Shown here: positions 3,993 to 27,711 of the stretch, piece by piece
Numbering within the stretch: the first letter of the stretch is position 1
How the letters are laid out: each line of letters begins with the position of its first letter
IMG/VR virus record: IMGVR_UViG_3300044641_009805
Coordinates: 1-64,000 of that record
Length of the DNA stretch: 64,000 bases
Strand: one strand, 5' to 3'
Position numbers and translations under genes: made by a program
Notes under the pieces: generated by a model
Databases searched by the model: none
What the model was told of the DNA's origin: nothing
The model's input: only the letters and a program-made list of their open reading frames with translations

Positions 3993-4225
3993 GAATTGGT
4001 GATCTTGTTTGTACTCATGTGTTTGGTGTTGATGTATTCCTTGGTGTTGTATTGGATATCCAACCAATGAAGGATGTTTACAAGGATTCCAACCGTGGGG
4101 AGAAGATGAATTCGGTAAAGATCCTATGGGAAAAACCTGTACCAAGTTGGTTAGGTGAAGGAAGAATTTGTGAAGTAACTGATTCAATTCTTCAGGTGGT
4201 GGAACCGGAGGAATTGGATGAGTGA
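3989..4225 (+). CDS. small SH3-like hypothetical protein
   Basis: MRIGDLVC...GVVL...KILW. Confidence 0.7.
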   Translation: MRIGDLVCTHVFGVDVFLGVVLDIQPMKDVYKDSNRGEKMNSVKILWEKPVPSWLGEGRICEVTDSILQVVEPEELDE

Positions 4226-4415
4226 TAAACACCGTGGATTTTTACCTGGTGATCAGGTGAAGGTGGTTAATCCCTGGTACACCAGGAAACCCCCACAACT
4301 CGGTGTTGTTATCGAGGTGGTTCCTAGTGGTGGTGTGGTTAATTCTAACAGGATAAAATTGGTGGTTCCTGAAGGAATTACCTGGAGATGGGATCATGAG
4401 TGCGAGAGAATTTGA
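4218..4415 (+). CDS. small SH3-like hypothetical protein
   Basis: FLPGDQVKV...GVVIEV. Confidence 0.65.
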   Translation: MSDKHRGFLPGDQVKVVNPWYTRKPPQLGVVIEVVPSGGVVNSNRIKLVVPEGITWRWDHECERI

Positions 4416-4635
4416 GTTAGGTTCTCTGGTGAAATTGAACAGAACCTATATTCAACACCCATCCAAACCTATACTTGGTATCCTACTTGAATATGAAAAG
4501 TTTGATGATAACAATGGGGCCTTTGGAAAGGTTTCAAAAATAAAACTATTGTTATCCAATGGAATTTCCAAAGATTATTTCCTGTTCAAGGAGGATGAAT
4601 TGGAGATGGTAAATGAGATCAATATCCCCAGGTGA
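4396..4635 (+). CDS. small SH3-like hypothetical protein
   Basis: FELGSLVKL...GILLEY. Confidence 0.65.
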   Translation: MSAREFELGSLVKLNRTYIQHPSKPILGILLEYEKFDDNNGAFGKVSKIKLLLSNGISKDYFLFKEDELEMVNEINIPR

Positions 4636-4792
4636 TTTGGTGATTCATTCCTATGGAGTTCCAATGATCGGTATGGTGTTGGAGGTTAGAGGTGAATTTC
4701 CTTGGAGTTACCGAGTGGTGTGGAATTCAGGGGAGATAAAGGATTGTGATTTGGGTACCGTGAGGAGAGTGTGGTGTTATGAAGGTAGGTGA
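4613..4792 (+). CDS. small SH3-like hypothetical protein (59 aa, below the ORF-track cutoff)
   Basis: MRSISPGDLVIHSYGVPMIGMVLEV...YRVVWNSG read from the sequence. Confidence 0.65.
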   Translation: MRSISPGDLVIHSYGVPMIGMVLEVRGEFPWSYRVVWNSGEIKDCDLGTVRRVWCYEGR

Positions 4793-5027
4793 TTTGGTTA
4801 CTCCAGATCCTAAGGGATGTACCGATAGAGGTTTACATGTTTACCCATTTTGGGGTTCCAAGGATACCGGAATACCGGTACCGGTGGGAAGTTGGAAGTT
4901 GGGTGAGGTTGGTGTGTTACTGGAATCACTTGAGGTTCAAGGTGGAAATGGTTGTAAGGTGTTGTGTGGTAGTGTTTCAGGTTGGGTTTACCTATGTTAC
5001 CTGAAAATTGTGGATGATGAAAAGTAA
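4779..5027 (+). CDS. small SH3-like hypothetical protein
   Basis: MKVGDLVT...KVLCGSVSGWV. Confidence 0.7.
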   Translation: MKVGDLVTPDPKGCTDRGLHVYPFWGSKDTGIPVPVGSWKLGEVGVLLESLEVQGGNGCKVLCGSVSGWVYLCYLKIVDDEK

Positions 5028-5114
5028 AATGAGGTTTTACTTTGGTGTAGGAAAGGTAACTCCAGGGATACTTTTGTGAGGAGGAGAAACACCTCAGGAA
5101 TATGGCCTTTGGAT

Positions 5115-5297
5115 ATGCTCACCGGTGATTTGGTGTTGCGTGAGGATTTTGATGGGAGAAATATATTGGTGTTTATGGGATGGGTGGATAGGAACAAATA
5201 CCATGCCATGATTTATGATTATCAGGGTTATAGGCCATTTTGGTTCAACCCGAATTATTCGATGGAGAAATGGTGGATTATAAACCCGATAGAATAA
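5115..5297 (+). CDS. small SH3-like hypothetical protein
   Basis: MLTGDLVL. Confidence 0.6.
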   Translation: MLTGDLVLREDFDGRNILVFMGWVDRNKYHAMIYDYQGYRPFWFNPNYSMEKWWIINPIE

Positions 5298-5482
5298 CGG
5301 TTGGTGATCTGGTGAATTGGTATGAGAAGGAATTTGGGGCCAGTGTTGTTGGTTTGGTTTTAGGGGTGAAACCCCATACATTTTATCCGGAAGTTGATAT
5401 ATACTCAATTCTGGATTTTGATGGATTGAAGAGGGAGATATATTCCTCGTTGTGGTCGGAGTATAGGATATTGAATAGATGA
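5270..5482 (+). CDS. small SH3-like hypothetical protein
   Basis: ITVGDLVNW...GLVL. Confidence 0.65.
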   Translation: MVDYKPDRITVGDLVNWYEKEFGASVVGLVLGVKPHTFYPEVDIYSILDFDGLKREIYSSLWSEYRILNR

Positions 5483-5718
5483 AGAATGTGTGGAATAGTA
5501 GCGATAATGGAGGAAATCCACCTGAGGGGTTGGATGAAAAGGTGAGGAAGGGTGATCTGGTTAGGTTTACCCATTTTCCTTCATTTAATGGTTTTGTTGG
5601 GATTTACCTGGGGGTTGATGTTGAGGGTGGTAGATCCAAGTGGAAGTTTGCCACCGATAGGGGAATGGAATGGGTGGATCCAAAGGGGTTGTCACATTAT
5701 AGGGTTGATTTGGTGTGA
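5479..5718 (+). CDS. small SH3-like hypothetical protein
   Basis: VRKGDLVRF...GIYLG. Confidence 0.65.
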   Translation: MKNVWNSSDNGGNPPEGLDEKVRKGDLVRFTHFPSFNGFVGIYLGVDVEGGRSKWKFATDRGMEWVDPKGLSHYRVDLV

Positions 5719-5763
5719 AAATAAGCTGTGTAAAACAATCGCTGCGAGATGTAGATTTTACAC

Positions 5764-6762
5764 GTGAATGGAATTTTACCTCTAATCGGCCTGATAGGCT
5801 CTACACTTCTTTCAGTTTGGGCTGCTTTCAAATACCTGCTAACATCATCTTATCGGCTTGAGGATGGTGTATCAAAGCTTCTCCTGTCGCGTATTCGAAA
5901 AGAAAAGCCCCTATCCTGGATGTTCGGTGGAGAACATGTAACACCGCCACGATTTCCAGAGCTGTGGGAAGGTTTTCTGTTGTTGGACAAGATTCCCCTG
6001 TATTTCCACCGCAACGAGAGGTTGATGACTGCCGGGTGGAAATCAAAGGAATCGATCTCAACCCTGTCGTTCTTCAGGTGGAATAGGTCACAAGTGGATA
6101 GGTTGTTGGCCCATGTGAACACAGGTGAATCGATACAGGTTTCAGCTCTTACACCCCACGGAACCGATAGGCTTGGTGAACTTGAACCTGGCGGTGAAGG
6201 TGAGTTGTACCTGAATCCTGGGAGCTACGAGGATATTGAGGAGGATGTGAAGAGGGTTTTGTCAGGAGAGTTGAATAAAACTGGTGCTCTTCTCTATGGA
6301 TCTCCAGGAAATGGAAAGACTCGATTCGTTCGTTACCTGTCAAAGAAGTATTCGTTGCCAATCAATGTTGTTTACCTCCTTCCAGACTACAACAACCTCG
6401 ACATCAGTCTCATGTTCTCCAATATTCCTCAACGATCAATCGTTCTTCTCGAGGACTTCGACAACCTCTTCGACGGGCGGAAGTGCACCATTCCAAACGA
6501 CCAGATAAAGTTTACCTTCGACTCTATCATCAATGCCCTCGATGGGGTACACAACGATTATCGACAGGTGGTATTCATCATGACCGTGAATGATATTGGA
6601 AAGGTGGATGACAGCATCAAAGAGAGGCCATCAAGGTTCAAGTTTGTCAAGGAATTTGGTCCGCCAAAACTTGAGGTGCGGGAGAGAATTTTGGGTGATA
6701 GGAACCTTGCTATCATTGCTGAAGGATTGTCATTAGATAAGGTGGTTCATTTTAAAAATTAA
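5764..6762 (+). CDS. membrane-anchored AAA+ ATPase (BCS1-like)
   Basis: N-terminal TM helix; Walker A GSPGNGKT, Walker B LLEDFD, INALDG, sensor TVN, RPSRF. Confidence 0.8.
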   Translation: MNGILPLIGLIGSTLLSVWAAFKYLLTSSYRLEDGVSKLLLSRIRKEKPLSWMFGGEHVTPPRFPELWEGFLLLDKIPLYFHRNERLMTAGWKSKESISTLSFFRWNRSQVDRLLAHVNTGESIQVSALTPHGTDRLGELEPGGEGELYLNPGSYEDIEEDVKRVLSGELNKTGALLYGSPGNGKTRFVRYLSKKYSLPINVVYLLPDYNNLDISLMFSNIPQRSIVLLEDFDNLFDGRKCTIPNDQIKFTFDSIINALDGVHNDYRQVVFIMTVNDIGKVDDSIKERPSRFKFVKEFGPPKLEVRERILGDRNLAIIAEGLSLDKVVHFKN

Positions 6763-9571: not shown

Positions 9572-10360
9572 TCAGCATAAACCGCTGAAGGTTCCTTTTT
9601 TTATTTCTTCGATCTCTTGCTTTTTGAGAACAATCAATTTTTCAGGAAACTGAGACCATTTGGCTAGATCTCTTTCTCTTTCATAGCCCTTGACTTCGAT
9701 GTATAGATCTAGATTAGGCAGATAAAAGTCAGGAAAGTATGTTCTAGATCCGTTCCATTCATAGGGAAACCCTTTCGTACACCTTTGAGGATCAAGACCA
9801 TTTATTTTTGCCCATTTATAAAATTCTACTTCCCATTTACCTTGAAGTTTGATTCCGTCCATGATAACTTGCTTTACTCTGCCTCTTCTTCCACCCATGA
9901 AAGCTTCAGGATTTTCAGCGATTCTTTTCTTCATCATTTCTGATATTTGTTTTCTCTTTTCTTCAGACATCTTGAAAGGACGCTTTTGCTTTCTAATAAA
10001 ATTTCTTTTTTGACGAGCATCATATCTTTTCTTTTCTTCTTCAGACATGTCTTCTATGGTGAGATATTCAGGAGTTTCTCTTCCTCCCCTATGTTCATCA
10101 CACCACTTCTTCGTTTTGCTGGCTGCAAGAAATATTTTTCCACATTTTGCGCATGTAATCTCATATCTTTTTTCAAAAGTTTTTCCTGCGCTCCATCCTT
10201 TTTGTCCCATCAACTTTTTTGAAACCTTTTCGTTAATCTCTTTTCTCTTTTTAGAAGTTGAAGTAGATCTAGCACAAGGCTGGCTACAAAATCTCCCTGA
10301 TCCATAGAATTTTTCTGGTATTTTTCCACATTTTTCACACGGTTTTAGATTATTTTCCAT
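9572..10360 (-). CDS. free-standing homing-endonuclease-like protein (Zn ribbons + NUMOD3-like + PD-(D/E)XK nuclease)
   Basis: CEKC..FCSQPC, CAKC, MSEEKRKQIS, YFPDFYLP..IEVKG. Confidence 0.75.
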   Translation of the reverse strand: MENNLKPCEKCGKIPEKFYGSGRFCSQPCARSTSTSKKRKEINEKVSKKLMGQKGWSAGKTFEKRYEITCAKCGKIFLAASKTKKWCDEHRGGRETPEYLTIEDMSEEEKKRYDARQKRNFIRKQKRPFKMSEEKRKQISEMMKKRIAENPEAFMGGRRGRVKQVIMDGIKLQGKWEVEFYKWAKINGLDPQRCTKGFPYEWNGSRTYFPDFYLPNLDLYIEVKGYERERDLAKWSQFPEKLIVLKKQEIEEIKKGTFSGLC

Positions 10361-10505
10361 GACGATAAGTATAGAACTTGAACCGAGAAGTAGACTCTTG
10401 ATCTATATTTTACGAAAAAAGTAGTCTAATCCCAAACAAAAAACCGGCCAGGATTTCTCCCAGGCCGGTCATGTTAGGTGAACTGATTATATAATCAGGC
10501 GATCA

Positions 10506-11060
10506 TCACCAGCCGCCGCCGCCGCCTCCACCACCACCGAAGCCGCCACCGCCGCTCATCACGTAAACAACGATTTTGAAAGAGATTCCAGAAACAACAG
10601 CGATGAAATTATACATTGTGAAACCAGGTAACTCGGGATTCGTATTTGAATAAGTGCTGCCGTAATAATCAGAGAAGTATATGTCACCGAGGTTGAGTGG
10701 CACGTTTCCGCTGGCTATTTGAGAGACAGCGTTGAAAGACGAATCTGATGTTGATATCGTATACGCCTGAGATGCATATGTTGATGTCAACGAATTGGAC
10801 ATTGCGAAGAAGTTCTGGAATTCAACTACGTCGCCTGGATTGACTGGGACCGACACGTTATTCCCTGTCATAAAGTCTGGGTAGGTCCAATATACTGCTG
10901 GACCGCCTCCGCCTCCGCCTCCGCCTCCGCCACCGCCGCCACCGCCGCCACCATCGAGTGGTGCCGTGCCTGCTCCCATTCTTCCTCCCAGTCCCAAATC
11001 AATCAATTTGATTGTTTGACCTGGTGTATAATTTTCTGTTTTTTTCCATTTAATGGCCAT
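10506..11060 (-). CDS. Gly-linker putative virion appendage/decoration protein
   Basis: MAIKW start with GGAG RBS; poly-Gly linkers; beta-rich domain. Confidence 0.55.
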   Translation of the reverse strand: MAIKWKKTENYTPGQTIKLIDLGLGGRMGAGTAPLDGGGGGGGGGGGGGGGGGPAVYWTYPDFMTGNNVSVPVNPGDVVEFQNFFAMSNSLTSTYASQAYTISTSDSSFNAVSQIASGNVPLNLGDIYFSDYYGSTYSNTNPELPGFTMYNFIAVVSGISFKIVVYVMSGGGGFGGGGGGGGGW

Positions 11061-11146
11061 AAAGATCTCCTGATCGAACGCGATGTTGAGCGCTCGACGC
11101 AAATATAATTATGTAATCTTTAGTAGAATCGTTGTAATATAGAATC

Positions 11147-14100
11147 ATGTTCCGAAAATTCGCAGTTGTTTTTTCGATGATTCTGTTTGTTGTTGTAGGA
11201 GTCTACTCTACCGCTCGAGCCCAGTTCACTCCGCCCCTTGATTCTAAGGTGAAGATTCCGAACGTTCTCCTTCTCGTCGACACGAGTGCCTCAATGACTT
11301 GGGCACTGGATGGAAATAACGCAGATTGCAAGGACGAGCTGAACCCGAAGAAGGCGCGTTACACCATCCTTGGTGAGGTTCTTACAGGAACTGTGGATGA
11401 TCTCGATTGTTGGTCAAACAACGATCCGCTCAACATCGACGGTCCGCCTGTTCCCCTTATGTCGAACTCAGAACGACATCAACCCGGTGGTCAGAACTGT
11501 GTCCCTACTTTAAACCTTGATGTTGATATCATCAATTCCCTCAAGGCACAACCCTTCGGTTGGCCTTACGAAGCCGCAGATAAAGACAATTCATCCGCAA
11601 TCACTTACTGTGGAGGCAAAACTTCTCTCAAGTTCGCACGATGTTTCTCCTCTTCGGGTTGGAGTAATCGAGATGTTTGCAGCAAGGCCACAATCGGGTG
11701 GAACCAGGCGGCCGATGGATTGCTGGACACATATGGATCCAAGATTCGATTTGGAATGATGTCTTTCGATTCACTTGTGTGGCCAGGATATTCAACATCC
11801 GACCTCTATTCCAACAAGACCATGGCATGGTGGACACCTGAGACAGGAGGTCCTGTAACTTTTACATATGATCCATTGTGTAGGAACAACACGATGGGAC
11901 ACTATTGCTTCCTGTATTCATATTCGCTTATGTACTATGATACGGCTGAGTGGTCATATTGGCACGGCACGGGAAGCACCTTGAGCTCAACATGGTTGAC
12001 AGGAGCAAGATCTGCAACACTGTTTCCTACGACTGCAATCGTCGGCGGGGCATACACACTTGCAAGCTCGGACATTGGAGCAAGAAATTCTAGGGCTCTT
12101 CCTCACAAGGGCCGCATGATTGGTTTTGGTCATCCGGACGCTGTTGCGACCGATACTGTTGCTCACAATGAAATGGTTCAGGATGCAATCCTTGGATTAT
12201 CCACGAACCTCGAACACAACACTCCTCTTGCTGCTCTCATGCGAGATGCCTTCGAGTTTGTTGCCAATGATGTTTCCACCAATGGTGTCACAATTCCACA
12301 CCCAACGACATCTGTTCCCAATTTGGTAACAATCGGTCCTCAAACTGATCCATATTTCTCATCCACAGCTCGATGCCGGGATACACTAGTCATCCTCATC
12401 ACCGACGGAGAGCCTACTGGGGATCTAAACGATAGAATGTCCTTTTGGGCAGGAAGATTGGCAACCGAGCAGGATGTCAAGACAATTGTATTTGGAATTG
12501 GATTGGAAACAGCTCGATGGAAACCTGGATCAACCATCCTCACAAAGAAGTGCGATGATCTAGCTCCATCAGATTACAGCTCAGTTTCCACCGGAACAAC
12601 CATGTGCACACGAGATGGCTTGAGCTGGAAATACGCGGATAATCCACTCTTCACATTTGGCCTGACAACTACAGATCGATCCGCCATTCGTGCCTGTTGT
12701 AACCTGTTGGAAACTGCGATCCTTGGAGATCCAACCAATTCCTACGGTCAGGTTCCATATTTTCCCAACGATCAGGCACAGCTAAAACAAACACTCGACA
12801 CGATCCTCAAGTCGATCGCAGGAACAACTGTGAGCAGAACAGTTCCGGTCTTCGCCAACATCTCTTCAACGTTTCAGTCAGGTAATGCTCCTGCTTCATA
12901 CTACGAGCTACGATCCGCACTCATTCCTGCCTCTAAGCCCACCAGTGGAACCCTCGAGCGGGTGAGGTATGCGTGCAATAATTCATTCGAACCTATCAGA
13001 CAAAGCGTTGAGGAGACCAAGGGAGATCAATTCCACAAGAACCTCGATGCCACATCTGTCAGGCCACGAAAGTTCATCACGGTGGTTCCTCTGAAGGCCG
13101 GAAGTGTTGTGAAACCAATGTGGACAGTGAGACCTGCAGTGGTTGTCGAGGATCAACTCATGGGTTCACCTGCAACATCAGGAAACTTTGTCAGGCTGGA
13201 TGTAACAGCTCCTGATCTCACAGCTCCATACCAACCTGATTTTGGTGTAGGTATCGACACGCTTGCATCTACTGTCAATTCCTTGGGCGGAACATATCCA
13301 AAAAGTTCAGAGCTGTTGAACCTTTCCAATTCCGACAAGAGCACATGTCTCAGTCAGGTTGGAACAACCGACCTAGAGGAATGCGCCAAACGCGTGTTGC
13401 AGTGGTACGGAGGAAGTCCTCAGGTTTATTCCCTTGGTGCAGGTAAGTTCTCACCATCACGAGATCCAAATGTTTGCGGAGGATGGGACAAGTGTGGACC
13501 GCTGGGTGCGATCTTCCGTTCCAACCCAGTCATCGTTGAACCGCCAAGCCAAAATGCTGCTGAGCAGGCCTACTCGAACAATAGACCAACAGGAACAACA
13601 TCCTTCTACCAGCAACAAAGAACTCGTCCAACGATGTTGTATTCACAAACAATCGATGGTATGCTGCATGCATTTGTTCTATCGAAGAATGCTGCCCTTC
13701 CCGATTCGTATGCAAACGTATCCACGGTAGACTCGCTTGAGAACAACGAGCTATGGAGCTTCATTCCTCCTGCGATCCTTCCACAGATCTGGCCCAACTT
13801 CAAGACAGAGGCTCGATTGCTTGATGGGCCTCTAACTGTTGGCAACGTTGTTTTCAGCAGGAACATGACGCAGACTTCTGAGGGAACAACAAATCTTTCA
13901 GGATTCAGGACGGTCCTCGTTGGTTCATCAGGATATGGAGATTCTGGGTTCTATTATGCGGTGGATGTGACAAATCCAATTGAACCACGTTTCCTGTGGC
14001 AGCTCGTGAATTCATCCGGTGGTAATGCCTTGTTTGGCAAGGTTCTTCCAGGGGCAGCAATTACCATGTTGAAGATCAAGGATCCAAAGGATGGGATCAT

Positions 14101-15391
14101 CAAGCAGGTTGGAGTTGCCATCCTCCCGGGTGGAAGGGATCCTGGAACACCCACCGCCACGATGTCACGTAGGATCTTCAGCACATCACGATCTCCACTC
14201 TTCGCGTGGAATGGTCAATACTATCCACGAACACTGATTAGAAATTGGGGTGCGAAGGTACCATCCAGATCTTTGACCGTTGTAGAATTGGAGACAGGTA
14301 GGATCATCGCGCGGCTGGCAGGCGAGTGGGGTGATAATCCTGGCAAGACCTCAACATCCACATGTTCAGGTGGGCCTGGTGGTGCCGATTCCCTGACTTG
14401 CGGGTTATCACCTACAGTAATTGTGAATCCCACGCGAGTCAGTTTCGATTCTCCGCTCACGGGAACACCTGTTCCTTTCCCATCAGGCGTGGCTCAAACA
14501 TCCACACGCGCGTATGTTGGTGATGCTGATGGTGTCGTCTGGCGGATCAACATGGCAGATCCTGAACCGCTCAAGTGGACAGCTGAAATTGCATGGGATG
14601 CATACAATCACACGTCTGTCCCAGATAATTCTTTGAAATTATCATACGTAGTTAATGGCATCAATTCTGGGAACCCTCTGAACCTATCGACAACCTCGTT
14701 GGTTGCTGCAACCATGGGCCAACCAATCGAACAGGCACCCATTGTTTCCGTAGATTCTCGCGGTGTCACAACTGTTACGTTGACAACAGGTGACGGCGAA
14801 TCTTTCAACACAGTTTCACCGGGCACACTCAACTTCCTCGCAACATTTGTAGATGACTTGAATGCAAGTGGAACATCTTTCGCACCAACCATCAATGCAA
14901 CACAAGGCATTTCGATGGCGTTTACGGATGGGGGCAGGGTGACAGGACCCCCTACACTCTTCGATGGCAAACTATTCTTCAGTTACTTCTCGCCTCAAAC
15001 GGCGACAGTTTGCACCTCAGGTAAGAGTGGTTGGTGCGCCGTTGATTTCTTGAATGGTAACAATTCAACTCCTCTCGCTGTCATGGATGTGGATCCGCTT
15101 CTTCCAGGTAACGATCGTTGTACCACATTCCAGAACGGTGAGGTCGTCTTCGGTCTTGCAATCAATGCAGTTCCATCATGCGTTCAAACTGAGGACAACT
15201 TCAATGATCAGTGGTTGGCAGGTCAGTACAACAGCTATTCATCATCAAAGGGTATGAACTACCAACTCGTTATGCAAACAAGTCAAGGTGGAACATCTGA
15301 AAATAATTCAACAATTAATTCCACACGAATCACACTTCCTCCACCACGAGCCAAAACTCGATTGCAATCGTGGGTCTCCGTGATGCAATAA
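11147..15391 (+). CDS. pilY1: PilY1/PilC-like type IV pilus adhesin (signal peptide, vWA, PilC beta-propeller)
   Basis: Signal peptide ending ARA; MIDAS LLVDTSASM..NTPLA..ITDGEP; GMLHAF..ELWSFIPP..LDG; AYVGDADGVVWRI. Confidence 0.8.
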   Translation: MFRKFAVVFSMILFVVVGVYSTARAQFTPPLDSKVKIPNVLLLVDTSASMTWALDGNNADCKDELNPKKARYTILGEVLTGTVDDLDCWSNNDPLNIDGPPVPLMSNSERHQPGGQNCVPTLNLDVDIINSLKAQPFGWPYEAADKDNSSAITYCGGKTSLKFARCFSSSGWSNRDVCSKATIGWNQAADGLLDTYGSKIRFGMMSFDSLVWPGYSTSDLYSNKTMAWWTPETGGPVTFTYDPLCRNNTMGHYCFLYSYSLMYYDTAEWSYWHGTGSTLSSTWLTGARSATLFPTTAIVGGAYTLASSDIGARNSRALPHKGRMIGFGHPDAVATDTVAHNEMVQDAILGLSTNLEHNTPLAALMRDAFEFVANDVSTNGVTIPHPTTSVPNLVTIGPQTDPYFSSTARCRDTLVILITDGEPTGDLNDRMSFWAGRLATEQDVKTIVFGIGLETARWKPGSTILTKKCDDLAPSDYSSVSTGTTMCTRDGLSWKYADNPLFTFGLTTTDRSAIRACCNLLETAILGDPTNSYGQVPYFPNDQAQLKQTLDTILKSIAGTTVSRTVPVFANISSTFQSGNAPASYYELRSALIPASKPTSGTLERVRYACNNSFEPIRQSVEETKGDQFHKNLDATSVRPRKFITVVPLKAGSVVKPMWTVRPAVVVEDQLMGSPATSGNFVRLDVTAPDLTAPYQPDFGVGIDTLASTVNSLGGTYPKSSELLNLSNSDKSTCLSQVGTTDLEECAKRVLQWYGGSPQVYSLGAGKFSPSRDPNVCGGWDKCGPLGAIFRSNPVIVEPPSQNAAEQAYSNNRPTGTTSFYQQQRTRPTMLYSQTIDGMLHAFVLSKNAALPDSYANVSTVDSLENNELWSFIPPAILPQIWPNFKTEARLLDGPLTVGNVVFSRNMTQTSEGTTNLSGFRTVLVGSSGYGDSGFYYAVDVTNPIEPRFLWQLVNSSGGNALFGKVLPGAAITMLKIKDPKDGIIKQVGVAILPGGRDPGTPTATMSRRIFSTSRSPLFAWNGQYYPRTLIRNWGAKVPSRSLTVVELETGRIIARLAGEWGDNPGKTSTSTCSGGPGGADSLTCGLSPTVIVNPTRVSFDSPLTGTPVPFPSGVAQTSTRAYVGDADGVVWRINMADPEPLKWTAEIAWDAYNHTSVPDNSLKLSYVVNGINSGNPLNLSTTSLVAATMGQPIEQAPIVSVDSRGVTTVTLTTGDGESFNTVSPGTLNFLATFVDDLNASGTSFAPTINATQGISMAFTDGGRVTGPPTLFDGKLFFSYFSPQTATVCTSGKSGWCAVDFLNGNNSTPLAVMDVDPLLPGNDRCTTFQNGEVVFGLAINAVPSCVQTEDNFNDQWLAGQYNSYSSSKGMNYQLVMQTSQGGTSENNSTINSTRITLPPPRAKTRLQSWVSVMQ

Positions 15392-15396
15392 AAAAC

Positions 15397-15418
15397 GGCA
15401 GGATAGAAATATCCTGCC
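15397..15418. terminator. hairpin between convergent genes
   Basis: GGCAGGATA-gaaa-TATCCTGCC flanked by A-runs. Confidence 0.6.
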
Positions 15419-15528
15419 TGAAAAAGCACTACTTAAGCATAATCAATGAAACCAGGTGATTTGGGCATGTGACCGCCATGTTTGTTGGCATCTTGTGCAA
15501 TCATACTTTTTGTGTAGGTGGTTCACGC

Positions 15529-16323
15529 TCACAGACCGAAACGTGTTCTAGTAGCATCCCAGTTCTGTGTTAGTTCGCTGGTGTTAAGCGCCCTATTGTA
15601 GAAGGCTACGGAACCTACGGTACATGACAGGTACACAGGGGATGCGTAACCGGTCCATTTGGAGGCAATTCTGTAGCCTTCCAAACCATTTAATCCTCCT
15701 ATTGCCCCCGCCGCCGAAGAGGCCACCAAGGAATTGTTGGAGTACAATTTGAATCCTGCTGAGTCCTTCATACCGACAAGGAAGTAGAAGGCGCCAAGGG
15801 TCGCTGAGAAGGGTGAACCCGAGGTGCCGAACCAATTATTGCCAATGACATATGTGTTTGTTGAGACTCCTGATGTTGAGTACAGGTGTCCTAAGCAATA
15901 GTTGACGCTTCCATTCCCACTTGGTGAGGTCTCGTCGGTGAAAAACTGCTCAGACCCTGAGGGATCGTCTGCATCCCTTCTGACCCACATGCAGATGGTC
16001 CATTCGGTCTGAGCACCGAGAGCAGGACCGGCCGCATACTGTGTGGAAGGTTTGCTGAACGATACTATCCCGCCATTCGTTGCTGAATAAGTCGGCGAAT
16101 TGTAGAGTGTGGCATGTTTTCCGTTTCCGCTCAAGTCGGTCCATGTTGTACCGCTGCCAGGATAGGATGCTGGGTTACCTGCGTCGAGATGGAGGATTAA
16201 ACCCGACGAGACGATGGGAGAACCTCCGCCACTACCTCCCCCTCCCGACGAAGTAACCTTCATACCTCCCCCTGTTCCTCTAAGTCTGAACGAACCACCT
16301 GAACCTGTTATCTTTATAGCCAT
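15529..16323 (-). CDS. LamG/concanavalin A-like lectin domain virion protein
   Basis: LILHLDAGNPASYPGSGTTWTDLSGNG...FYNRALNTSE..QNWDATRTRFGL. Confidence 0.8.
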   Translation of the reverse strand: MAIKITGSGGSFRLRGTGGGMKVTSSGGGGSGGGSPIVSSGLILHLDAGNPASYPGSGTTWTDLSGNGKHATLYNSPTYSATNGGIVSFSKPSTQYAAGPALGAQTEWTICMWVRRDADDPSGSEQFFTDETSPSGNGSVNYCLGHLYSTSGVSTNTYVIGNNWFGTSGSPFSATLGAFYFLVGMKDSAGFKLYSNNSLVASSAAGAIGGLNGLEGYRIASKWTGYASPVYLSCTVGSVAFYNRALNTSELTQNWDATRTRFGL

Positions 16324-16387
16324 AAAATCTCCTCGACAAAGTTCATTTCTCTGTCTGTAGTTATTAACTAATGCCGCTCAAATAAAA

Positions 16388-16411
16388 CGGGTGCAAAATA
16401 AATTGCACCCG
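16388..16411 (-). terminator. rho-independent terminator
   Basis: CGGGTGCAA..TTGCACCCG followed by T-run on the minus strand. Confidence 0.6.
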
Positions 16412-16438: not shown

Positions 16439-17275
16439 TCAGATCGATATTCCGTATTTGTTTGCTAGGTATTGCGTAACTTGAAGACGCTTAGTATTAT
16501 CGTGTTGCTCGCTGTATATTAAACCTTCGGCAAACTTACCACAGAAATTACGTATTCCAAGGTCGCCGACTGCAGATCCTATGACTAGCATAACTGGATT
16601 AATAGACAGAGTATAACCATAACCTGCATAGCCTGGCTGAACAGTCCCTACTTGATCGTTTACATATAACTCTGTAGTGGCAGGGTGAGCACCTGCTGAC
16701 AGAGACACGGATATTACGACCGCAGGGGGCCCGTGCGCGTCATTTTTCTTAACAGCATAATCACCAGTGTTGTAATTTATGAAGTAAGCAGGACCGCCCC
16801 ATGCTGGTTGTAATGAACTTACCGAGGCCTGCGCCATCGTCGCCGCCTGTCCCCAACCTAAGATGGTAAAAGTAGAATCAGAGTTGGTGTTATCAGCATA
16901 AGCCACTACGTACATTGAGTACGCTGTGGCGCCTGATGGTAGACCCGATGGAGAGCTTTTGTAAAGAAAGGAAGACCCATTGAAGCTAACGCTAGGCATG
17001 TTGCCGAATTGAGCATCAGATGCGTTATAAGTGGGAGTACCGCCATATCCATTCAGAGTGTTTCCACCTGCACTGTCCGTCCATGATGTGACGGTAGCTC
17101 CATTTGATAGACCCAATGCGTCAGCCTTAAACCAAGAGCTGAGATTACCTAGAGAAGATGGATCAAATCCTCCTCCGCCGCCGCCGCCACCACCGCCTGA
17201 TGAAGTGATGCTTATACCACCGCCTGTTCCGCTAAATTTGATGGATCCACCGGATCCTTTTGTCACTATTGCCAT
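16439..17275 (-). CDS. LamG-like domain virion protein
   Basis: WFKADAL..VTSWTDSAG..GKFAEGLIY..YLANKYGI. Confidence 0.75.
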   Translation of the reverse strand: MAIVTKGSGGSIKFSGTGGGISITSSGGGGGGGGGGFDPSSLGNLSSWFKADALGLSNGATVTSWTDSAGGNTLNGYGGTPTYNASDAQFGNMPSVSFNGSSFLYKSSPSGLPSGATAYSMYVVAYADNTNSDSTFTILGWGQAATMAQASVSSLQPAWGGPAYFINYNTGDYAVKKNDAHGPPAVVISVSLSAGAHPATTELYVNDQVGTVQPGYAGYGYTLSINPVMLVIGSAVGDLGIRNFCGKFAEGLIYSEQHDNTKRLQVTQYLANKYGISI

Positions 17276-21165: not shown

Positions 21166-21768
21166 ATGAATATCATTAAAGACATCTCAAAACGTTTAGA
21201 AAAAGTCGAGCTACGTTACAACCCAGTGATCATCAGGGTGAATAAATTTGATGAGGAAGCCGCCGAAAAGTTCTCCAATCAAATGTCGGCCGCGCAGTCC
21301 ACGGGTCAAACGATGATCCCAGTGGTCATAGACTCTTATGGGGGTCAAGTCTACTCTCTCATGTCCATGATCGCAAACATTAAGGCTTCAAACATTCCGG
21401 TGGCAACAATCGTCGAAGGTAAGGCCATGTCATGTGGTGCGTTGTTGTTCAGCTACGGTACTTCTGGTTATCGTTTCATGGATAAGCACGCCACCATCAT
21501 GATCCATGATGTTTCTAGTGGTGCCAGGGGAAAGATCGAAGAGATCAAGGCCGACGCAAAAGAAGGTGATAGACTAAACCAGCTTGTTTATAGAGAAATG
21601 GCGGCAAATTGTGGCAAGGAACCTGAATTCTTTTTGAAGCAAATTCATGATAGGTCACACGCCGACTGGTATTTGGACGCAGAAGAAGCCCAATCGATCG
21701 GTCTGGCAAACCATTTACGAGTGCCTAGCCTCAAGGTGAAGGTCGACGTGTCTTATAGCTTTGAGTGA
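21166..21768 (+). CDS. clpP: ClpP-family protease subunit
   Basis: IDSYGG, GKAMSCGA (catalytic Ser), IMIHDVS, DWYLDAEEA..GL. Confidence 0.85.
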   Translation: MNIIKDISKRLEKVELRYNPVIIRVNKFDEEAAEKFSNQMSAAQSTGQTMIPVVIDSYGGQVYSLMSMIANIKASNIPVATIVEGKAMSCGALLFSYGTSGYRFMDKHATIMIHDVSSGARGKIEEIKADAKEGDRLNQLVYREMAANCGKEPEFFLKQIHDRSHADWYLDAEEAQSIGLANHLRVPSLKVKVDVSYSFE

Positions 21769-21830: not shown

Positions 21831-21884
21831 TGTCTCTGAGGAGTAGTTATGGCTATAAATTTTAATGGCGTAAGAATAAAACCT
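21831..21884 (+). repeat. 54-bp direct repeat (RBS + N-terminus) identical to 23753..23806
   Basis: TGTCTCTGAGGAGTAGTTATGGCTATAAATTTTAATGGCGTAAGAATAAAACCT at both sites. Confidence 0.9.
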
Positions 21885-22754
21885 TGCGCAGGAGGTGGTG
21901 CAGCATCACCTTCCAACAACATAACAAGTTTCGAAACAATAACTGGTGATTCATACACGAAATTTTTGGCACACTTTGACGGTGCGGATGGATCAACATC
22001 TTTTACAGATGATTCATCTAATCCAGGAACAGGAACATTTTCAGGAGCTGCCGTAATAAAGACTGCTCAGTCAAAATTCGGCGGTTCTTCGTTGTATTTC
22101 AACGGCAATAATGCTTCTAAATTTAAGTGCACTAATACTAATAACAAGGTAAACTTTGGTCCTACAGGTGGAAGTAGTTTTACCATTGAGTTATGGTTCT
22201 ACTACATATCACTCATACCTTGGACGTCGCTGATACATTTTAATACTTCAGCTTGGTATCAAGGACCTGCTCTAATAATGAACAACGCAGGTCAACTATA
22301 CCTTGAAAATTCGTATGGAGGATCTTTCCACTACGCGGTGAGCCCAGGATGGGTTCCGCCAACTGGTCAATGGCATCACATCGCCATTGTTGGCACTTCA
22401 GGTCAACATATCAAAATTTATATTAATGGTACGCTATATGTTACAAGAGCAGGCAGTTATTTTCTTAGCATGCCATCTGCCGGAGACATTGGGTTAGGTC
22501 ATTCTTTAAGTCTACCCGGCGGTCTTCCTGGAGATACCGGAGTGCGTACCATTAATGGATACATTGATGAGGTCAGGTTCTCTGATACTGCTAGATACAG
22601 TGCAAACTTCACCCCTTCCACTTCAGCTTTTGGAACAGGGGTTTTAACCTACCCAACAGCAGAGCTTGGAAAAATGGCCAAAGACAGCAATGGCTTTCTT
22701 TACGAATGTACTGATGCGGCAGTTCCCACATGGCGTAGATACACCTTAGGTTGA
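21849..22754 (+). CDS. LamG-like lectin domain virion protein (MAINFNGVRIKP family)
   Basis: HFDG..SKFGGSS..FTIELW..WHHIA..GYIDEVRFS..ARYSANFTP. Confidence 0.8.
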   Translation: MAINFNGVRIKPCAGGGAASPSNNITSFETITGDSYTKFLAHFDGADGSTSFTDDSSNPGTGTFSGAAVIKTAQSKFGGSSLYFNGNNASKFKCTNTNNKVNFGPTGGSSFTIELWFYYISLIPWTSLIHFNTSAWYQGPALIMNNAGQLYLENSYGGSFHYAVSPGWVPPTGQWHHIAIVGTSGQHIKIYINGTLYVTRAGSYFLSMPSAGDIGLGHSLSLPGGLPGDTGVRTINGYIDEVRFSDTARYSANFTPSTSAFGTGVLTYPTAELGKMAKDSNGFLYECTDAAVPTWRRYTLG

Positions 22755-22777
22755 GAACAATAAAAGGAGATTAAATT

Positions 22778-23635
22778 ATGACTATAAATTTTAATGGCGT
22801 AAGAATTAAACCTTGCGCCGCACCAGTCAATTCAAACACAGCAACTTATATTCAACCCGTTGGTGATTCAACGGTTTCTTTGCTTCTTCACATGGATGGA
22901 GCCAATAATAGCACGACATTTACCGACAGTTCTTATACACCAAAAACCGTCACCGCTTACGGCAATGCTAAAATCAGCACTGCTGCAAGTAAGTTTGGTG
23001 GTTCTTCTGCGGCATTTGATGGTAATGGTGATTACATAGAATTTGACAGAGGAACAGATCTTCAATTTGGAGCAGGTGATTTCACAATTGAAGGATGGGT
23101 AAATCTAAATTCTTTTGCAAGTTATCAAAGCGTTTTCGGCGGTTACGATATAGGCTTTGATATTCAAAATTCAACAACGATCGTGGTGGGATACAATGCT
23201 ATAGGTGGCGGGTTCATGTCAAGAACAGTTTCAGCAATGTCAACAGGAACCTGGTACCACTGGGCAATGTCAAAAACTTCTGGCACATTTAGATTGTTCT
23301 GGAATGGAGTACAGGCTGGCGCCAGTGCTGTGGCTCCTGCGATGAACAATACAGTAAGCAAATGGGTCATTGGTAAAAATGCCACCAACAACACCTCACA
23401 TCATCTTAATGGATATGTTGATGAAGTTAGGGTCACAAAGGGAGTAGGTCGTTACACCGCAAACTTCACGCCTCCTGCCTCAGCTTTCTCAAATGCAAAT
23501 GGATCTGTTGAGCTACCATCGAGCCCAATAGTTGGTCAAGCTGTCTATTCTGATGATAGAGCTTACATCTGCACGAGTGCCTCACCAGTTACCTGGAAGG
23601 TGTTCGATCAGGCAGGCAGAAACATCAATATCTGA
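22778..23635 (+). CDS. LamG-like lectin domain virion protein
   Basis: LLLHMDG..SKFGGSS..DFTIEGW..GYVDEVRVTKGVGRYTANFTP. Confidence 0.8.
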   Translation: MTINFNGVRIKPCAAPVNSNTATYIQPVGDSTVSLLLHMDGANNSTTFTDSSYTPKTVTAYGNAKISTAASKFGGSSAAFDGNGDYIEFDRGTDLQFGAGDFTIEGWVNLNSFASYQSVFGGYDIGFDIQNSTTIVVGYNAIGGGFMSRTVSAMSTGTWYHWAMSKTSGTFRLFWNGVQAGASAVAPAMNNTVSKWVIGKNATNNTSHHLNGYVDEVRVTKGVGRYTANFTPPASAFSNANGSVELPSSPIVGQAVYSDDRAYICTSASPVTWKVFDQAGRNINI

Positions 23636-23658
23636 TTAAGAATAATCAATAAAAACTT

Positions 23659-23692
23659 TTCAGGACCTCGGCCTTTCGACCTTGGTCCTGAA
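23659..23692 (+). terminator. repeated terminator hairpin, copy 1
   Basis: TTCAGGACCTCGG-cctttcga-CCTTGGTCCTGAA + T-run; also at 24768 and 25649. Confidence 0.75.
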
Positions 23693-23770
23693 TTTTATTT
23701 AATGACTAATTCATAATTGAATTTATATTTATTCTTAAGAGATGTCTACAGATGTCTCTGAGGAGTAGTT

Positions 23771-24742
23771 ATGGCTATAAATTTTAATGGCGTAAGAATA
23801 AAACCTGCATCTGGTGGTGCTGGTGGTGGAGTTTCCTGGCCTGGTGATGGAACAAAAATTTTGGCAGGTGATGGATCACAGGTTGTTGTTGGCGATGGTC
23901 TGGATTTGTCTGCAGGCACTCTAACATCCAATGGGCCTTCATCTACATACATAGCAACGGTAGGAGACTCTTCAGTCTCTTTGCTTCTTCACATGAATGG
24001 AGCAAACAACAGCACGACGTTTACCGACAATTCTTATACACCAAAAGCTGCCACAGTTAGTGGCAATGCAAAGATTAGTACAACCGATAGCAAATTTGGC
24101 GGGTCTAGCGGATATTTTGATGGAAATGGTGACTATTTCTATTATTCATATAATAACGATTTCAACTTAAGTACAGGAGATTTTACGATAGAAGGTTGGG
24201 TAAACCCCAGCTCTCTCGCATCTCAAATGTGTCCAATTGCAAAACATCAAACTACCATTTCTCAAGATTGGCAATTTTATATTATAAATTCTACGACAAT
24301 TGGCTTTGCTGCATCTGGTCTTGTGACGAGAACGGTTCCAACGATAACAACGGGAACCTGGTATCACTTTGCCGTAGTAAAACTCTCAGGTAACACATCC
24401 ATCTATTGGAATGGTATTAGACAAGGAGCAACTTTTGCCAACGTACCAACTAATTCCGTAGCTGCAGTTGTAATTGGCGCTGACAGATTGAACGCTATTC
24501 AATATCCATTTCACGGATATATCGATGAAATTAGAGTCAGCAAAGGTATCGCAAGATATTCTGCTGATTTCACACCTTCTGCAACAGCTTTCGCAAATCC
24601 AGATGGCTCGGCTGAACTGCCTGCCGCTCCCGTGGCAGGAGATGTCGTTTACTCCGACACGGGAATCTACGTTTGTTCTAGTGCTTCTCCTGTTGTTTGG
24701 AAAAAATTTGACGGAGCACCAACACAGACCATAACGATCTAA
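23771..24742 (+). CDS. LamG-like lectin domain virion protein
   Basis: Same family; close paralog of 22778..23635. Confidence 0.8.
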   Translation: MAINFNGVRIKPASGGAGGGVSWPGDGTKILAGDGSQVVVGDGLDLSAGTLTSNGPSSTYIATVGDSSVSLLLHMNGANNSTTFTDNSYTPKAATVSGNAKISTTDSKFGGSSGYFDGNGDYFYYSYNNDFNLSTGDFTIEGWVNPSSLASQMCPIAKHQTTISQDWQFYIINSTTIGFAASGLVTRTVPTITTGTWYHFAVVKLSGNTSIYWNGIRQGATFANVPTNSVAAVVIGADRLNAIQYPFHGYIDEIRVSKGIARYSADFTPSATAFANPDGSAELPAAPVAGDVVYSDTGIYVCSSASPVVWKKFDGAPTQTITI

Positions 24743-24767
24743 ACATCAAACATAACGACAAAAACTA

Positions 24768-24801
24768 TTCAGGACCTCGGCCTTTTAGCCTTGGTCCTGA
24801 A
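24768..24801 (+). terminator. repeated terminator hairpin, copy 2
   Basis: Near-identical to 23659..23692. Confidence 0.75.
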
Positions 24802-24863
24802 TTTTCATGACTTTTTGATACTTTGTAAAGCGGATACATATACCTAATTTAGAAGAGGACTTT

Positions 24864-27678: not shown

Positions 27679-27711
27679 GTTGTTATGTATACCTCTCCCT
27701 GCTCCAGTGTA

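What the first reader, a model, noticed from the sequence alone, without database searches (positions are those of the whole stretch)
11147..15391. Phage-encoded full-length PilY1 adhesin
Seen: a 1414-aa secreted Cys-rich vWA + PilC-propeller protein with an early-type promoter and no other pil genes in the window. Established: PilY1 sits at the type IV pilus tip and primes assembly, and T4P are common phage receptors. Inference: it could remodel or block host pili (superinfection exclusion) or change motility/adhesion of infected cells. The architecture suggests a myxobacterial source.
Basis: partly seen in the sequence, partly recalled or inferred. Interest (0 to 1): 0.68.

Follow-up and report, generated by a model that had tools for sequence, protein, structure and literature searches.

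The report
Jumbo phage carries a pilus-tip adhesin
A 278-kb lake-water phage carries an intact, long-kept copy of PilY1, the large adhesin that myxobacteria put on the tip of their type IV pili; no PilY1 was found in deposited phage genomes or in the papers searched, so it looks like a new way for a virus to re-equip its host's pili.

Summary
The ORF is real: 11147-15391 (+), 1414 aa, Sec signal peptide, 24 Cys. It has an N-terminal vWA domain with a complete MIDAS motif and a C-terminal PilY1-type beta-propeller. The best solved-structure match is P. aeruginosa PilY1, 3HX6.

The window is the start of a 278-kb IMG/VR record that encodes a T4 gp23-like head protein, three tail-sheath paralogues, DnaE, RNR and a tRNA array.

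The gene is not a mis-assembly. It lies in the same gene order in at least five independently assembled relatives (69-92% aa identity). Its GC3 (0.46) matches the phage, not its bacterial kin (0.73-0.94). dN/dS is about 0.05.

The phage copies form one clade nested among Polyangiaceae/Myxococcales PilY1 proteins. In the one such locus whose upstream genes I read (L005), the gene follows fimU-pilV-pilW-pilX. The phage record has no pilin or pilus ATPase gene.

A modelled complex docks the phage propeller and its C-terminal strand onto a Polyangiaceae PilX (ipSAE 0.67, best control 0.00).

A second IMG/VR record (361 kb) carries an independently acquired PilY1, and a third record may too.

Most likely the exported protein plugs into the host's minor-pilin tip complex and replaces the host adhesin. 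The pay-off (exclusion of tip-binding phages, changed adhesion) is untested. The host is inferred only, and the "early-type promoter" is not supported.

The parts
11147..15391 (+). pilY1-like gene, 1414 codons plus stop
   Evidence: ORF list and translation. Full-length homologues: 69-92% identity in phage contigs, about 40% in Polyangiaceae MAGs.
11147..11224 (+). Sec-type signal peptide, residues 1-26, predicted cleavage after A-R-A
   Evidence: Read directly from the translation. Equivalent N-termini in L002, L027 and L028, and in the independently acquired P0122 and P0123.
11240..12844 (+). vWA domain with large insertions, residues about 32-566; MIDAS residues D45, S47, S49, T359, D420
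   Evidence: AlphaFold2 model pLDDT 77.5. VIA-align Z 16.5/14.6/14.5 to the pilus adhesins PitA, SpaC and S. sanguinis PilB, spanning model residues 6-543. MIDAS columns invariant or nearly so.
12845..13546 (+). Middle region, residues about 567-800, beta-rich then helical, with conserved Cys pairs
   Evidence: Models. Invariant C610, C734, C746. dN/dS 0.10. No separate fold assignment attempted.
13547..15388 (+). PilY1-type beta-propeller and C-terminal region, residues about 801-1414
   Evidence: Profile hit to 3HX6, E 1.5e-19. Foldseek top hit 3HX6, E 5.7e-12, TM 0.52 normalised by target length. Weak PF05567 match at 13505-13678.
15344..15385 (+). C-terminal strand, residues 1400-1413, predicted to pair with PilX
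   Evidence: Interface list of the modelled complex with a Polyangiaceae PilX: residues 1400 and 1402-1413, plus 1196-1204 and 1267-1274. Matches the PilX-PilY1 beta-strand complementation described in PMC13190605.
11104..11111 (+). -10-like TATAATTA box, 36-43 nt upstream of the ATG
   Evidence: Sequence. The NATAATTN motif occurs 64 times in the 100 nt upstream of 365 genes, against roughly 19 expected from its genome-wide frequency (my rescaling of the figure). Kept in L002 but not in the more distant relatives. Function and timing unknown.
15397..15418 (.). Terminator-like hairpin between pilY1 and the convergent LamG-like gene
   Evidence: Consensus scan, called on the minus strand; 9-pair stem then a T run. 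The number of such hits in the region is at shuffle level, so this is weak evidence.

Best explanation
The gene is a working, host-derived copy of the type IVa pilus tip adhesin and priming factor PilY1, of the Polyangiales vWA-plus-propeller type. A lineage of freshwater T4-like jumbo phages captured it once, long ago, and has kept it.

Proposed mechanism:
1. During infection the protein is exported by the Sec pathway.
2. It forms its disulfides in the periplasm.
3. Through its propeller and C-terminal strand it docks onto the host's own PilX/minor-pilin complex.
4. It thereby takes the place of the host PilY1 at the base and tip of newly made pili, presenting the phage's vWA/MIDAS adhesin head.

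The likely pay-off is a changed pilus tip. One possibility is masking of the tip against phages that adsorb there, including the phage's own progeny, as shown for prophage FimU in Pseudomonas. Another is a change in what the infected cell sticks to.

Shown here: identity, domain make-up, phage residence, purifying selection, origin within Polyangiaceae-type PilY1, absence of other pilus genes.

Inferred: export, docking onto host minor pilins (in silico only), host identity, and the benefit.
For: - Identity: the family profile hits 3HX6 PilY1 at E 1.5e-19. The propeller model's top Foldseek hit is 3HX6 at E 5.7e-12. The vWA fold has pilus tip adhesins at the top, Z 16.5. MIDAS is complete.
- Phage residence: head, sheath, DnaE and RNR genes lie on the same 278-kb record. 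Neighbours are phage-like.
  - The order AAA - 515-aa structural protein - 130-aa protein - PilY1 - PP-loop ATPase recurs in L002, L003, L004, L027 and ERZ27292242 and in IMG/VR contigs.
  - A 10,956-nt contig of run X2 spans 10958-16399 (X2 may be the source sample). Independent run X6 spans 13334-16128.
- Long residence: GC3 is 0.457 against 0.73-0.94 in bacterial kin.
- Function kept: dN/dS is 0.05 overall, 0.03-0.11 per domain, with dS about 1.4 or more.
- Origin: the phage copies form one clade (SH-aLRT 100) inside a 28-member Polyangiaceae clade (97-98). All full-length GTDB relatives are Polyangiaceae/Myxococcales, including Lake Erken and Baikal MAGs.
- Bacterial context: the L005 homologue follows fimU-pilV-pilW-pilX with prepilin motifs. 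L006 appears to have three tandem PilY1 paralogues behind one minor-pilin set, so one set seems able to serve several PilY1s.
- Docking: phage residues 800-1414 with L005 PilX give ipSAE 0.67, best control 0.00. That mark was reached by 51 of 78 solved complexes and 2 of 108 mismatched pairs. Runs agree in at least 81% of contacts, and the partner's pLDDT is at least 66. The interface includes the C-terminal strand.
- Precedent: prophage FimU is built into the pilus and blocks tip-binding phages (PMC12952977).
- Recurrence: a 361-kb IMG/VR record carries a PilY1 from a different bacterial clade. The AU test rejects a single origin, p 7e-81.
Against: - No experiment and no expression data. The only RNA-labelled run holding the gene is probably DNA and comes from a diverged strain.
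- The host is unknown. The nearest cultured phages by head protein infect Microcystis and Flavobacterium. A roughly 42% GC phage on a 60-70% GC host would be unusual.
- The PilX used for docking comes from a MAG whose own PilY1 is only about 40% identical. A pass may reflect family likeness rather than a real pairing.
- The canonical calcium motif Dx(D/N)xDGxxD is absent, as it is in the nearest bacterial kin.
- The single sequence is below Pfam's PF05567 threshold.
- No sign of diversifying selection on the vWA head, which a phage-versus-phage arms race might predict.
- The record is 84% complete, so pilin genes could lie in the missing part.
Confidence: 0.55

Rival explanations
1. Dominant-negative blocker. 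The phage PilY1 docks onto the host minor pilins or the pilus machine but does not support priming. Infected cells lose their pili, which shuts out pilus-dependent phages and stops progeny from sticking to doomed cells.
For: Same docking evidence as the main explanation. All phage clade-A copies end in ...SW(V/A)SVMQ, where the bacterial kin printed mostly end in E. Known phage proteins disable pili (Aqs1, PMC13436744).
Against: The whole 1414-aa protein, including the MIDAS adhesin head, is under strong purifying selection (dN/dS 0.03-0.05 in the vWA part). A mere blocker should tolerate loss of that head. No truncated phage versions were seen.
Confidence: 0.15
2. Pilus-independent role. The exported protein acts as an outer-membrane or secreted adhesin, or as a surface-sensing signal input, changing aggregation, attachment or signalling of the infected cell without entering pili.
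For: The vWA/MIDAS adhesin fold is intact. PilY1 proteins have been found in several cell compartments, and the vWA domain is tied to surface signalling in P. aeruginosa (PMC13190605).
Against: The propeller and C-terminal strand that contact PilX are as conserved as the head and are predicted to dock onto PilX.
Confidence: 0.12
3. Virion protein. The PilY1 homologue is a tail-fibre-like receptor-binding part of the phage particle.
For: It lies among genes with virion-structural PHROG matches and a family of LamG/ConA-like proteins that look like receptor-binding modules.
Against: A conserved Sec signal peptide and 24 mostly conserved Cys point to export and periplasmic folding, whereas virions assemble in the cytoplasm. 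Viral structure models give only generic propeller matches.
Confidence: 0.05
4. Artefact or dead cargo. Either host DNA was joined to the phage by mis-assembly, or this is a recent passenger gene without function.
For: GC content swings from 0.32 to 0.61 along the record, which invites suspicion of a chimera.
Against: The gene has the same neighbours in at least five independent assemblies and in many lake metagenomes. GC3 is phage-like. dN/dS is 0.05 over a saturated dS. The reading frame is intact in all copies.
Confidence: 0.03

Closest known systems
Polyangiales-type PilY1 (vWA + beta-propeller; about clade 1.4a/1.4b of Mahanta et al. 2026, PMC13190605)
   Same: Full-length collinear homology at about 40% identity. 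Signal peptide, vWA with MIDAS, propeller, C-terminal strand, and 21-27 Cys in most copies counted. No canonical calcium motif in either.
   Different: Encoded by a phage, with no minor-pilin genes and no small downstream partner gene. GC3 0.46 instead of 0.73-0.94. Ends in Q where most of the bacterial kin printed end in E. I did not place it in that paper's own tree.
P. aeruginosa PilY1 C-terminal domain (PDB 3HX6)
   Same: Best solved-structure match by profile (E 1.5e-19) and by fold (E 5.7e-12). The motifs at the start of the propeller and the GD..G..WR motif align.
   Different: Only 14% identity over the fold alignment. The EF-hand-like calcium loop is missing. No RGD motif.
Prophage-encoded FimU (P-FimU) of Pseudomonas F10-like phages (Sztanko et al., Cell Rep 2026, PMC12952977)
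   Same: A phage carries a homologue of a host pilus-tip component. There it is built into the pilus in place of the host protein and blocks tip-binding phages. This is the nearest working model.
   Different: FimU is a small minor pilin, in temperate phages of a gammaproteobacterium, and is tested experimentally. Here it is the 1414-aa tip adhesin itself, in a T4-like jumbo phage of an unknown (probably myxobacterial) host, and untested. That paper's survey of phage genomes found only FimU- and PilA-like genes.
Phage inhibitors of type IV pili (e.g. Aqs1 of DMS3, PMC13436744)
   Same: Phage-encoded interference with pili as phage receptors.
   Different: Per the abstract, Aqs1 is a protein inhibitor of pilus function; from my own knowledge, such inhibitors are small cytoplasmic proteins. 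They are not homologues of a pilus part.
vWA pilus tip adhesins of Gram-positive and type V pili (PitA, SpaC, RrgA, GBS104, Mfa5; S. sanguinis PilB)
   Same: Best structural matches of the N-terminal domain, Z 12.6-16.5. MIDAS-type adhesin head at a pilus tip.
   Different: Unrelated pilus systems. Similarity is limited to the vWA fold at 16-20% identity.

Membership tests
PilY1/PilC type IVa pilus tip adhesin | C-terminal PilY1-type beta-propeller, by Pfam PF05567 at its curated threshold | tested here: not met
   No Pfam hit at E 0.1. Six-frame search gives 11.2 bits against a cut-off of 28.1. Many homologues at 27-39% identity do carry PF05567.
PilY1/PilC type IVa pilus tip adhesin | Homology and fold match of the C-terminal domain to the solved PilY1 propeller (3HX6) | tested here: met
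   Family profile against PDB: 3HX6 at E 1.5e-19, the only real hit. Model pLDDT 83.7; Foldseek top hit 3HX6 at E 5.7e-12, next hits at 1e-6 are generic propellers.
PilY1/PilC type IVa pilus tip adhesin | Exported (signal peptide) | tested here: met
   By inspection of the N-terminus and its conservation in relatives. No predictor was run.
PilY1/PilC type IVa pilus tip adhesin | Gene linked to minor pilins fimU-pilV-pilW-pilX | tested here: not met
   No prepilin gene anywhere in the 278-kb record. The nearest bacterial homologue is so linked. Unlinked pilY1 genes also exist in bacteria (PMC13190605), so this feature is usual but not obligatory.
PilY1/PilC type IVa pilus tip adhesin | Docks onto PilX by beta-strand complementation | tested here: met
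   In silico only. ipSAE 0.67 against a best control of 0.00; the mark was reached by 51 of 78 solved complexes and 2 of 108 mismatched pairs. Contacts agree in at least 81% between runs and the partner's pLDDT is at least 66. The C-terminal strand 1402-1413 is in the interface. The PilX came from a MAG, not from the unknown host.
PilY1/PilC type IVa pilus tip adhesin | Calcium-binding motif 1, Dx(D/N)xDGxxD, in the propeller | tested here: not met
   The pattern is absent from the phage copies and from the nearest bacterial kin. The motif is found in only 29 of 150 myxobacterial PilY1 proteins (PMC13190605).
PilY1/PilC type IVa pilus tip adhesin | Sits at the pilus tip and primes assembly | not testable with these tools
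   Needs piliation assays, sheared-pili blots or cryo-ET.
vWA (von Willebrand factor A) adhesin domain with MIDAS | vWA fold | tested here: met
   VIA-align against 48,161 chains: 99 chains at Z 8 or more, and all 50 listed rows are vWA-type domains (Ku and similar included), best 16.5 with 216 aligned residues at rmsd 3.0. Foldseek alone was weak, best E 0.04.
vWA (von Willebrand factor A) adhesin domain with MIDAS | MIDAS residues DxSxS ... T ... D | tested here: met
   D45 and S47 invariant; S49, T359 and D420 nearly invariant among 43 homologues. They sit after beta-1, before a helix and after a central strand in the model.
Phage-encoded pilus component that replaces the host's (P-FimU type) | Phage-encoded homologue of a host pilus structural part | tested here: met
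Phage-encoded pilus component that replaces the host's (P-FimU type) | Built into the pilus and blocks adsorption of tip-binding phages | not testable with these tools
   Needs a host, phages and adsorption assays.
CglB gliding-motility adhesin (NCBIfam NF033757) | Score over the curated cut-off | tested here: not met
   25.8 bits against 200, and only residues 22-65 (the beta-1/MIDAS stretch) match.

The most novel reading that the evidence does not exclude
Pilus-tip hijacking is a recurrent viral strategy. Unrelated large freshwater phages have captured the host's whole PilY1 tip adhesin at least twice independently, without any pilin genes. They use it to re-tip the pili of infected predatory myxobacteria. 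This would change what the infected cell binds and which phages can adsorb, a host-behaviour or receptor-editing function on a scale not described for phages (a 1414-aa adhesin rather than a small pilin or inhibitor).
Probability: 0.35. Interest if true: 0.8.

Novelty: new variant of a known kind. Interest (0 to 1): 0.62.

Why it matters
Phages are known to disable pili with small inhibitors. Recently they were also shown to swap in their own minor pilin (FimU) or PilA-like proteins. A phage-borne PilY1 would extend this to the adhesin that defines what the pilus tip binds and that primes pilus assembly.

Several points make it worth testing:
- It has been kept under strong purifying selection.
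- It was acquired more than once by large phages.
- It points to Myxococcota, a group from which, as far as I know, few phages have been cultured.

It offers a natural 'orphan' PilY1 for testing how freely tip adhesins can be exchanged on one minor-pilin set. It also gives a gene-based host clue for an abundant lake jumbo phage, found in lake-water metagenomes from more than 20 studies. I found no PilY1 match in 50,697 deposited phage genomes and no mention in the papers searched.

Tried and rejected
- Single-sequence Pfam scan and PDB phmmer search gave nothing. The profile and the folds were needed.
- The NCBIfam CglB hit is only the MIDAS stretch and was rejected.
- Foldseek on the N-terminal model was weak. 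The wide VIA-align search settled the vWA fold.
- Host clue from the high-GC3 island: the DUF2201 peptidase gene at 50003-51310 has only unnamed metagenome relatives at up to 93% identity, so it gives no taxon.
- The head protein points to T4-like phages of Microcystis and Flavobacterium, not to any myxophage. DnaE was equally uninformative.
- The head-protein search in the other PilY1-bearing records found nothing. The phrog_138 search rang nowhere, controls included, so it says nothing. phrog_23 found a sheath-like gene in the 361-kb record only.
- Alternative genetic codes were considered because of sparse long ORFs near the start of the window. The standard code already gives 90% coverage, so they were rejected.
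- Promoter class: the sigma-70 scan is at shuffle level, and the upstream region is not conserved across the clade.
- Expression: no true RNA run holds the gene. X23 is probably DNA from a 90-97% identical strain.
- AU tests that included the long-branched P0123 did not finish in time. Its separate origin rests only on tree placement, and that 87-kb record was not independently verified as phage.
- BFVD gave only generic propellers.

Full report
**1. The observation**

The standard code is appropriate. Stop-to-stop frames of 100 aa or more cover 90% of the record.

The N-terminus has two basic residues, about 15 hydrophobic residues and an A-R-A|Q site, so it reads as a Sec signal peptide. Relatives that differ in sequence keep the same layout. 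The protein has 24 Cys.

Single-sequence searches were nearly blank:
- no Pfam family;
- no PDB sequence match;
- only a 25.8-bit NCBIfam match of residues 22-65 to the gliding adhesin CglB, far under its 200-bit cut-off.

**2. What the protein is**

A word-index search found 196 relatives.
- Copies of 69-92% identity sit on unnamed metagenome contigs.
- Full-length proteins of about 40% identity come from Polyangiaceae/Myxococcales MAGs.
- About 30%-identical proteins of roughly 1200 aa come from Sorangium and Chondromyces. Many of these carry PF05567 or JGI's name 'type IV pilus assembly protein PilY1'.

A profile of 43 of these (A1) hits one solved protein, the C-terminal domain of P. aeruginosa PilY1 (3HX6), at E 1.5e-19. 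The start of the propeller and the GD..G..WR motif align.

An AlphaFold2 model of residues 620-1414 (pLDDT 83.7, pTM 0.88) has 3HX6 as its top Foldseek match at E 5.7e-12. The next matches, at 1e-6 and weaker, are generic propellers.

The model of residues 27-640 (pLDDT 77.5) was weak in Foldseek. In a full scan of 48,161 chains it gave Z 16.5 to the pilus adhesin PitA. SpaC, S. sanguinis PilB and Mfa5 score Z 13.6-14.6, RrgA 12.9 and GBS104 12.6, and every row is a vWA domain.

The MIDAS residues (D45, S47, S49, T359, D420) are invariant or nearly so in the family.

The canonical calcium loop Dx(D/N)xDGxxD and RGD are absent. They are also absent from the nearest bacterial kin, so this is a trait of the clade and not a phage-specific loss.

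The sequence itself misses Pfam's PF05567 threshold (11.2 against 28.1 bits).

**3. Is it really phage DNA?**

The window is the first 64 kb of a 278,435-bp linear IMG/VR record, estimated 84% complete. The record encodes:
- a T4 gp23-like major head protein (nearest isolates Microcystis phage Mel-JY01 and Flavobacterium phage immuto);
- three roughly 1000-aa tail-sheath paralogues, a DnaE-type polymerase and RNR, and an SbcCD-like nuclease;
- a 12-tRNA array plus one further tRNA in the window.

The immediate neighbours are phage-like:
- a virion structural protein (phrog_1645);
- an endonuclease;
- LamG/ConA-like proteins;
- a PP-loop ATPase, a SpoU methylase and ClpP.

Four results answer the mis-assembly refuter.
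- Synteny. The order AAA ATPase - 515-aa structural protein - 130-aa protein - PilY1 - PP-loop ATPase recurs on contigs from JGI, ENA and Logan assemblies whose PilY1 is 89%, 70% and 69% identical. It also recurs on five IMG/VR contigs.
- Contig continuity. The 6-kb stretch 10400-16399 is held by lake-water and freshwater metagenomes of 23 coded studies, 18 runs with at least half of its words.
  - One 10,956-nt contig of run X2 covers 10958-16399, both junctions included. X2 may be the source sample.
  - In independent run X6 a contig covers 13334-16128.
  - The only contig breaks fall at a CCGCCT repeat inside the upstream gene.
- Composition. The gene's GC3 is 0.457, like its phage neighbours, against 0.73-0.94 for bacterial homologues.
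- Selection. Against the 89% relative dN/dS is 0.05 (dS 1.4). Against the 73% relative it is 0.07. By domain it is 0.03-0.11.

The gene is an old, selected resident of this phage lineage.

**4. Where it came from**

In a 116-row maximum-likelihood tree the six phage-context proteins form one clade (SH-aLRT 100). That clade lies inside a 28-row group (97-98) of 1400-1500-aa proteins, whose named members come from Polyangiaceae/Myxococcales MAGs.

A scan of one genome per GTDB species found full-length relatives almost only in Polyangiaceae/Myxococcales. The few labelled otherwise are unclassified MAGs. The hits include MAGs from Lake Erken and Lake Baikal. Outside that group only the first 170-200 residues of the propeller match.

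In the Polyangiaceae MAG locus L005 the homologue follows four genes. Three have G|FTLVE-type prepilin motifs and the fourth has a PilX-like N-terminus, which is the classical fimU-pilV-pilW-pilX-pilY1 operon. In L006 one such set is followed by what look like three PilY1 paralogues in tandem.

The phage record has no prepilin motif, no PF07963 match and no real PilB/PilT match.

The myxobacterial source is therefore supported. The host itself is only inferred from it.

**5. It has happened more than once**

The IMG/VR scan also returned two further records.
- A 361-kb record: 33% GC, labelled provirus, 97% complete, with a sheath-like gene. It carries a 1206-aa PilY1 (P0122).
- An 87-kb record: 31.5% GC, with a 1125-aa PilY1 (P0123).

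Both proteins have signal peptides and low-GC phage-like neighbours, and neither locus has pilins nearby.

P0122 groups with the Sorangium-type clade (51% identity to P0057). Forcing it together with the window's clade costs 470 log-likelihood units (p-AU 7e-81). The group was named after I had seen the tree.

P0123 sits on a very long branch elsewhere. Its tests did not finish, and its record was not verified as phage beyond IMG/VR's label.

**6. How it most likely works**

A full-length adhesin with an intact export signal, MIDAS head, propeller and C-terminal strand, all under purifying selection, argues for the normal PilY1 job done on the host's machine.

Myxobacterial work shows that PilY1 sits on PilX at the tip of a FimU-PilW-PilV-PilX stack, joined by beta-strand complementation. 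It also shows that genomes hold several exchangeable or unlinked PilY1s (PMC13190605).

I tested the docking in silico, using phage residues 800-1414 with the PilX of L005.
- ipSAE was 0.67 in three runs, and the best of three controls was 0.00.
- That mark was reached by 51 of 78 solved complexes and 2 of 108 mismatched pairs.
- Contacts agree in at least 81% between runs, and the partner's pLDDT is at least 66.
- The interface comprises residues 1196-1204, 1267-1274 and the C-terminal strand 1402-1413, which are among the family's most conserved stretches.

This supports binding but does not show it. It may only reflect family likeness.

The closest experimental precedent is prophage FimU. 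It replaces the host minor pilin in the pilus, leaves motility intact and blocks phages that bind the tip. That paper's survey of phage genomes found only FimU- and PilA-like genes (PMC12952977).

My best explanation is tip replacement (0.55). The benefit, whether exclusion of tip-binding phages or altered adhesion, remains open.

Rivals:
- a dominant-negative blocker (0.15), weakened by selection on the adhesin head;
- a pilus-independent adhesin or signalling role (0.12);
- a virion protein (0.05), contradicted by the signal peptide and the Cys content;
- an artefact or dead cargo (0.03).

**7. What is not supported**

The 'early-type promoter' is not supported.
- There is a TATAATTA box at 11104-11111, and such boxes are enriched upstream of genes across this phage.
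- The sigma-70 scan is at shuffle level.
- The box also precedes putative structural genes.
- The 70% relatives have a tRNA 3' end and a hairpin there instead.

There is no evidence on expression.

**8. Novelty**

- No match to this protein in 50,697 deposited phage genomes.
- Only generic propellers in BFVD.
- No paper among those searched reports a phage PilY1.

The protein family is known, and so is the idea of phage-encoded pilus parts. The tip adhesin itself in jumbo phages, captured repeatedly, is a new variant.

Read laying was given 6,000 letters. No alternative code was used. No step needed referral.

Noticed in passing
window 25744-30191 (-): A PrkA kinase-like protein (644 aa), SpoVR (436 aa) and DUF444 (390 aa) lie in a row. 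This is the bacterial YeaG/YeaH/YcgB-type stress triad, here in a phage, and it is kept in the related contigs L002 and ERZ27292242.
   Followed up: partly
window 10506-11060 (-), 15529-16323 (-), 16439-17275 (-), 21849-25634 (+, four genes): A paralogue family that starts with a shared 'MAI(K/N)...' N-terminus, in several members followed by a poly-Gly linker. Most members carry a LamG/ConA-like lectin domain with PHROG matches to virion or baseplate proteins. They look like exchangeable receptor-binding modules, and they flank pilY1 in a region that varies between relatives.
   Followed up: partly
window 9572-10360 (-) and 10506-11102 (-): An endonuclease-like gene with very low GC3 (0.285) sits beside a shortened 184-198-aa 'MAIK' gene. 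Relative L002 has a single 471-aa version there instead, which suggests a mobile endonuclease insertion. Contigs of public runs break at the CCGCCT repeat 10903-10952.
   Followed up: partly
window 52059-53806 (-) and 62143-62217 (+): An array of 12 tRNA genes plus a separate tRNA-Arg(CCT). Several have U at the wobble position of the anticodon (Lys-TTT, Gln-TTG, Arg-TCT, Gly-TCC, Thr-TGT, Ala-TGC). That would fit a low-GC phage on a high-GC host.
   Followed up: no
whole record; window 46000-64000 and on to about 80 kb: GC swings from 0.32 to 0.61 along the 278-kb record. The high-GC part (GC3 up to 0.9) holds a DUF2201 metallopeptidase, a MoxR-like AAA_5 ATPase and a KaiC-like ATPase; a SIR2 gene (GC3 0.61) lies in the same stretch. 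The one gene searched (the DUF2201 peptidase, 50003-51310) has relatives at up to 93% identity in many unnamed metagenome contigs, so it is not obviously host DNA.
   Followed up: partly
window 37335-38957 (+), 21166-21768 (+): A phage-encoded GroEL-type chaperonin (Cpn60, E 2e-68) and a ClpP-like protease.
   Followed up: no
window 4001-6000: Unusually strong GC skew (+0.365) in one 2-kb window. Not explained.
   Followed up: no
L034 9983-13603 (IMG/VR 361-kb record); L035 9629-13006 (87-kb record): Two other low-GC IMG/VR records carry their own signal-peptide-bearing PilY1 genes from different bacterial PilY1 clades, again without pilin genes nearby.
   Followed up: partly
L006 8001-20377; L005 12423-12980: A Polyangiaceae metagenome contig appears to have three PilY1 paralogues in tandem behind one minor-pilin set (only the N-termini of the second and third were read). 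The first two are each followed by a small 100-115-aa gene. L005 has a 185-aa lipoprotein-like gene in that place. The phage copies lack this small partner.
   Followed up: no
G000 177649-187076 (outside the window): Three consecutive tail-sheath paralogues of about 1010-1020 aa each, unusual for a contractile-tail phage.
   Followed up: no
L027, L031, L033 just upstream of pilY1: In the 70%-identity relatives the gene is preceded by what looks like a tRNA 3' end (T-arm, acceptor, CCA) and a hairpin with a T run. The region upstream of pilY1 has therefore been rebuilt within the lineage.
   Followed up: no
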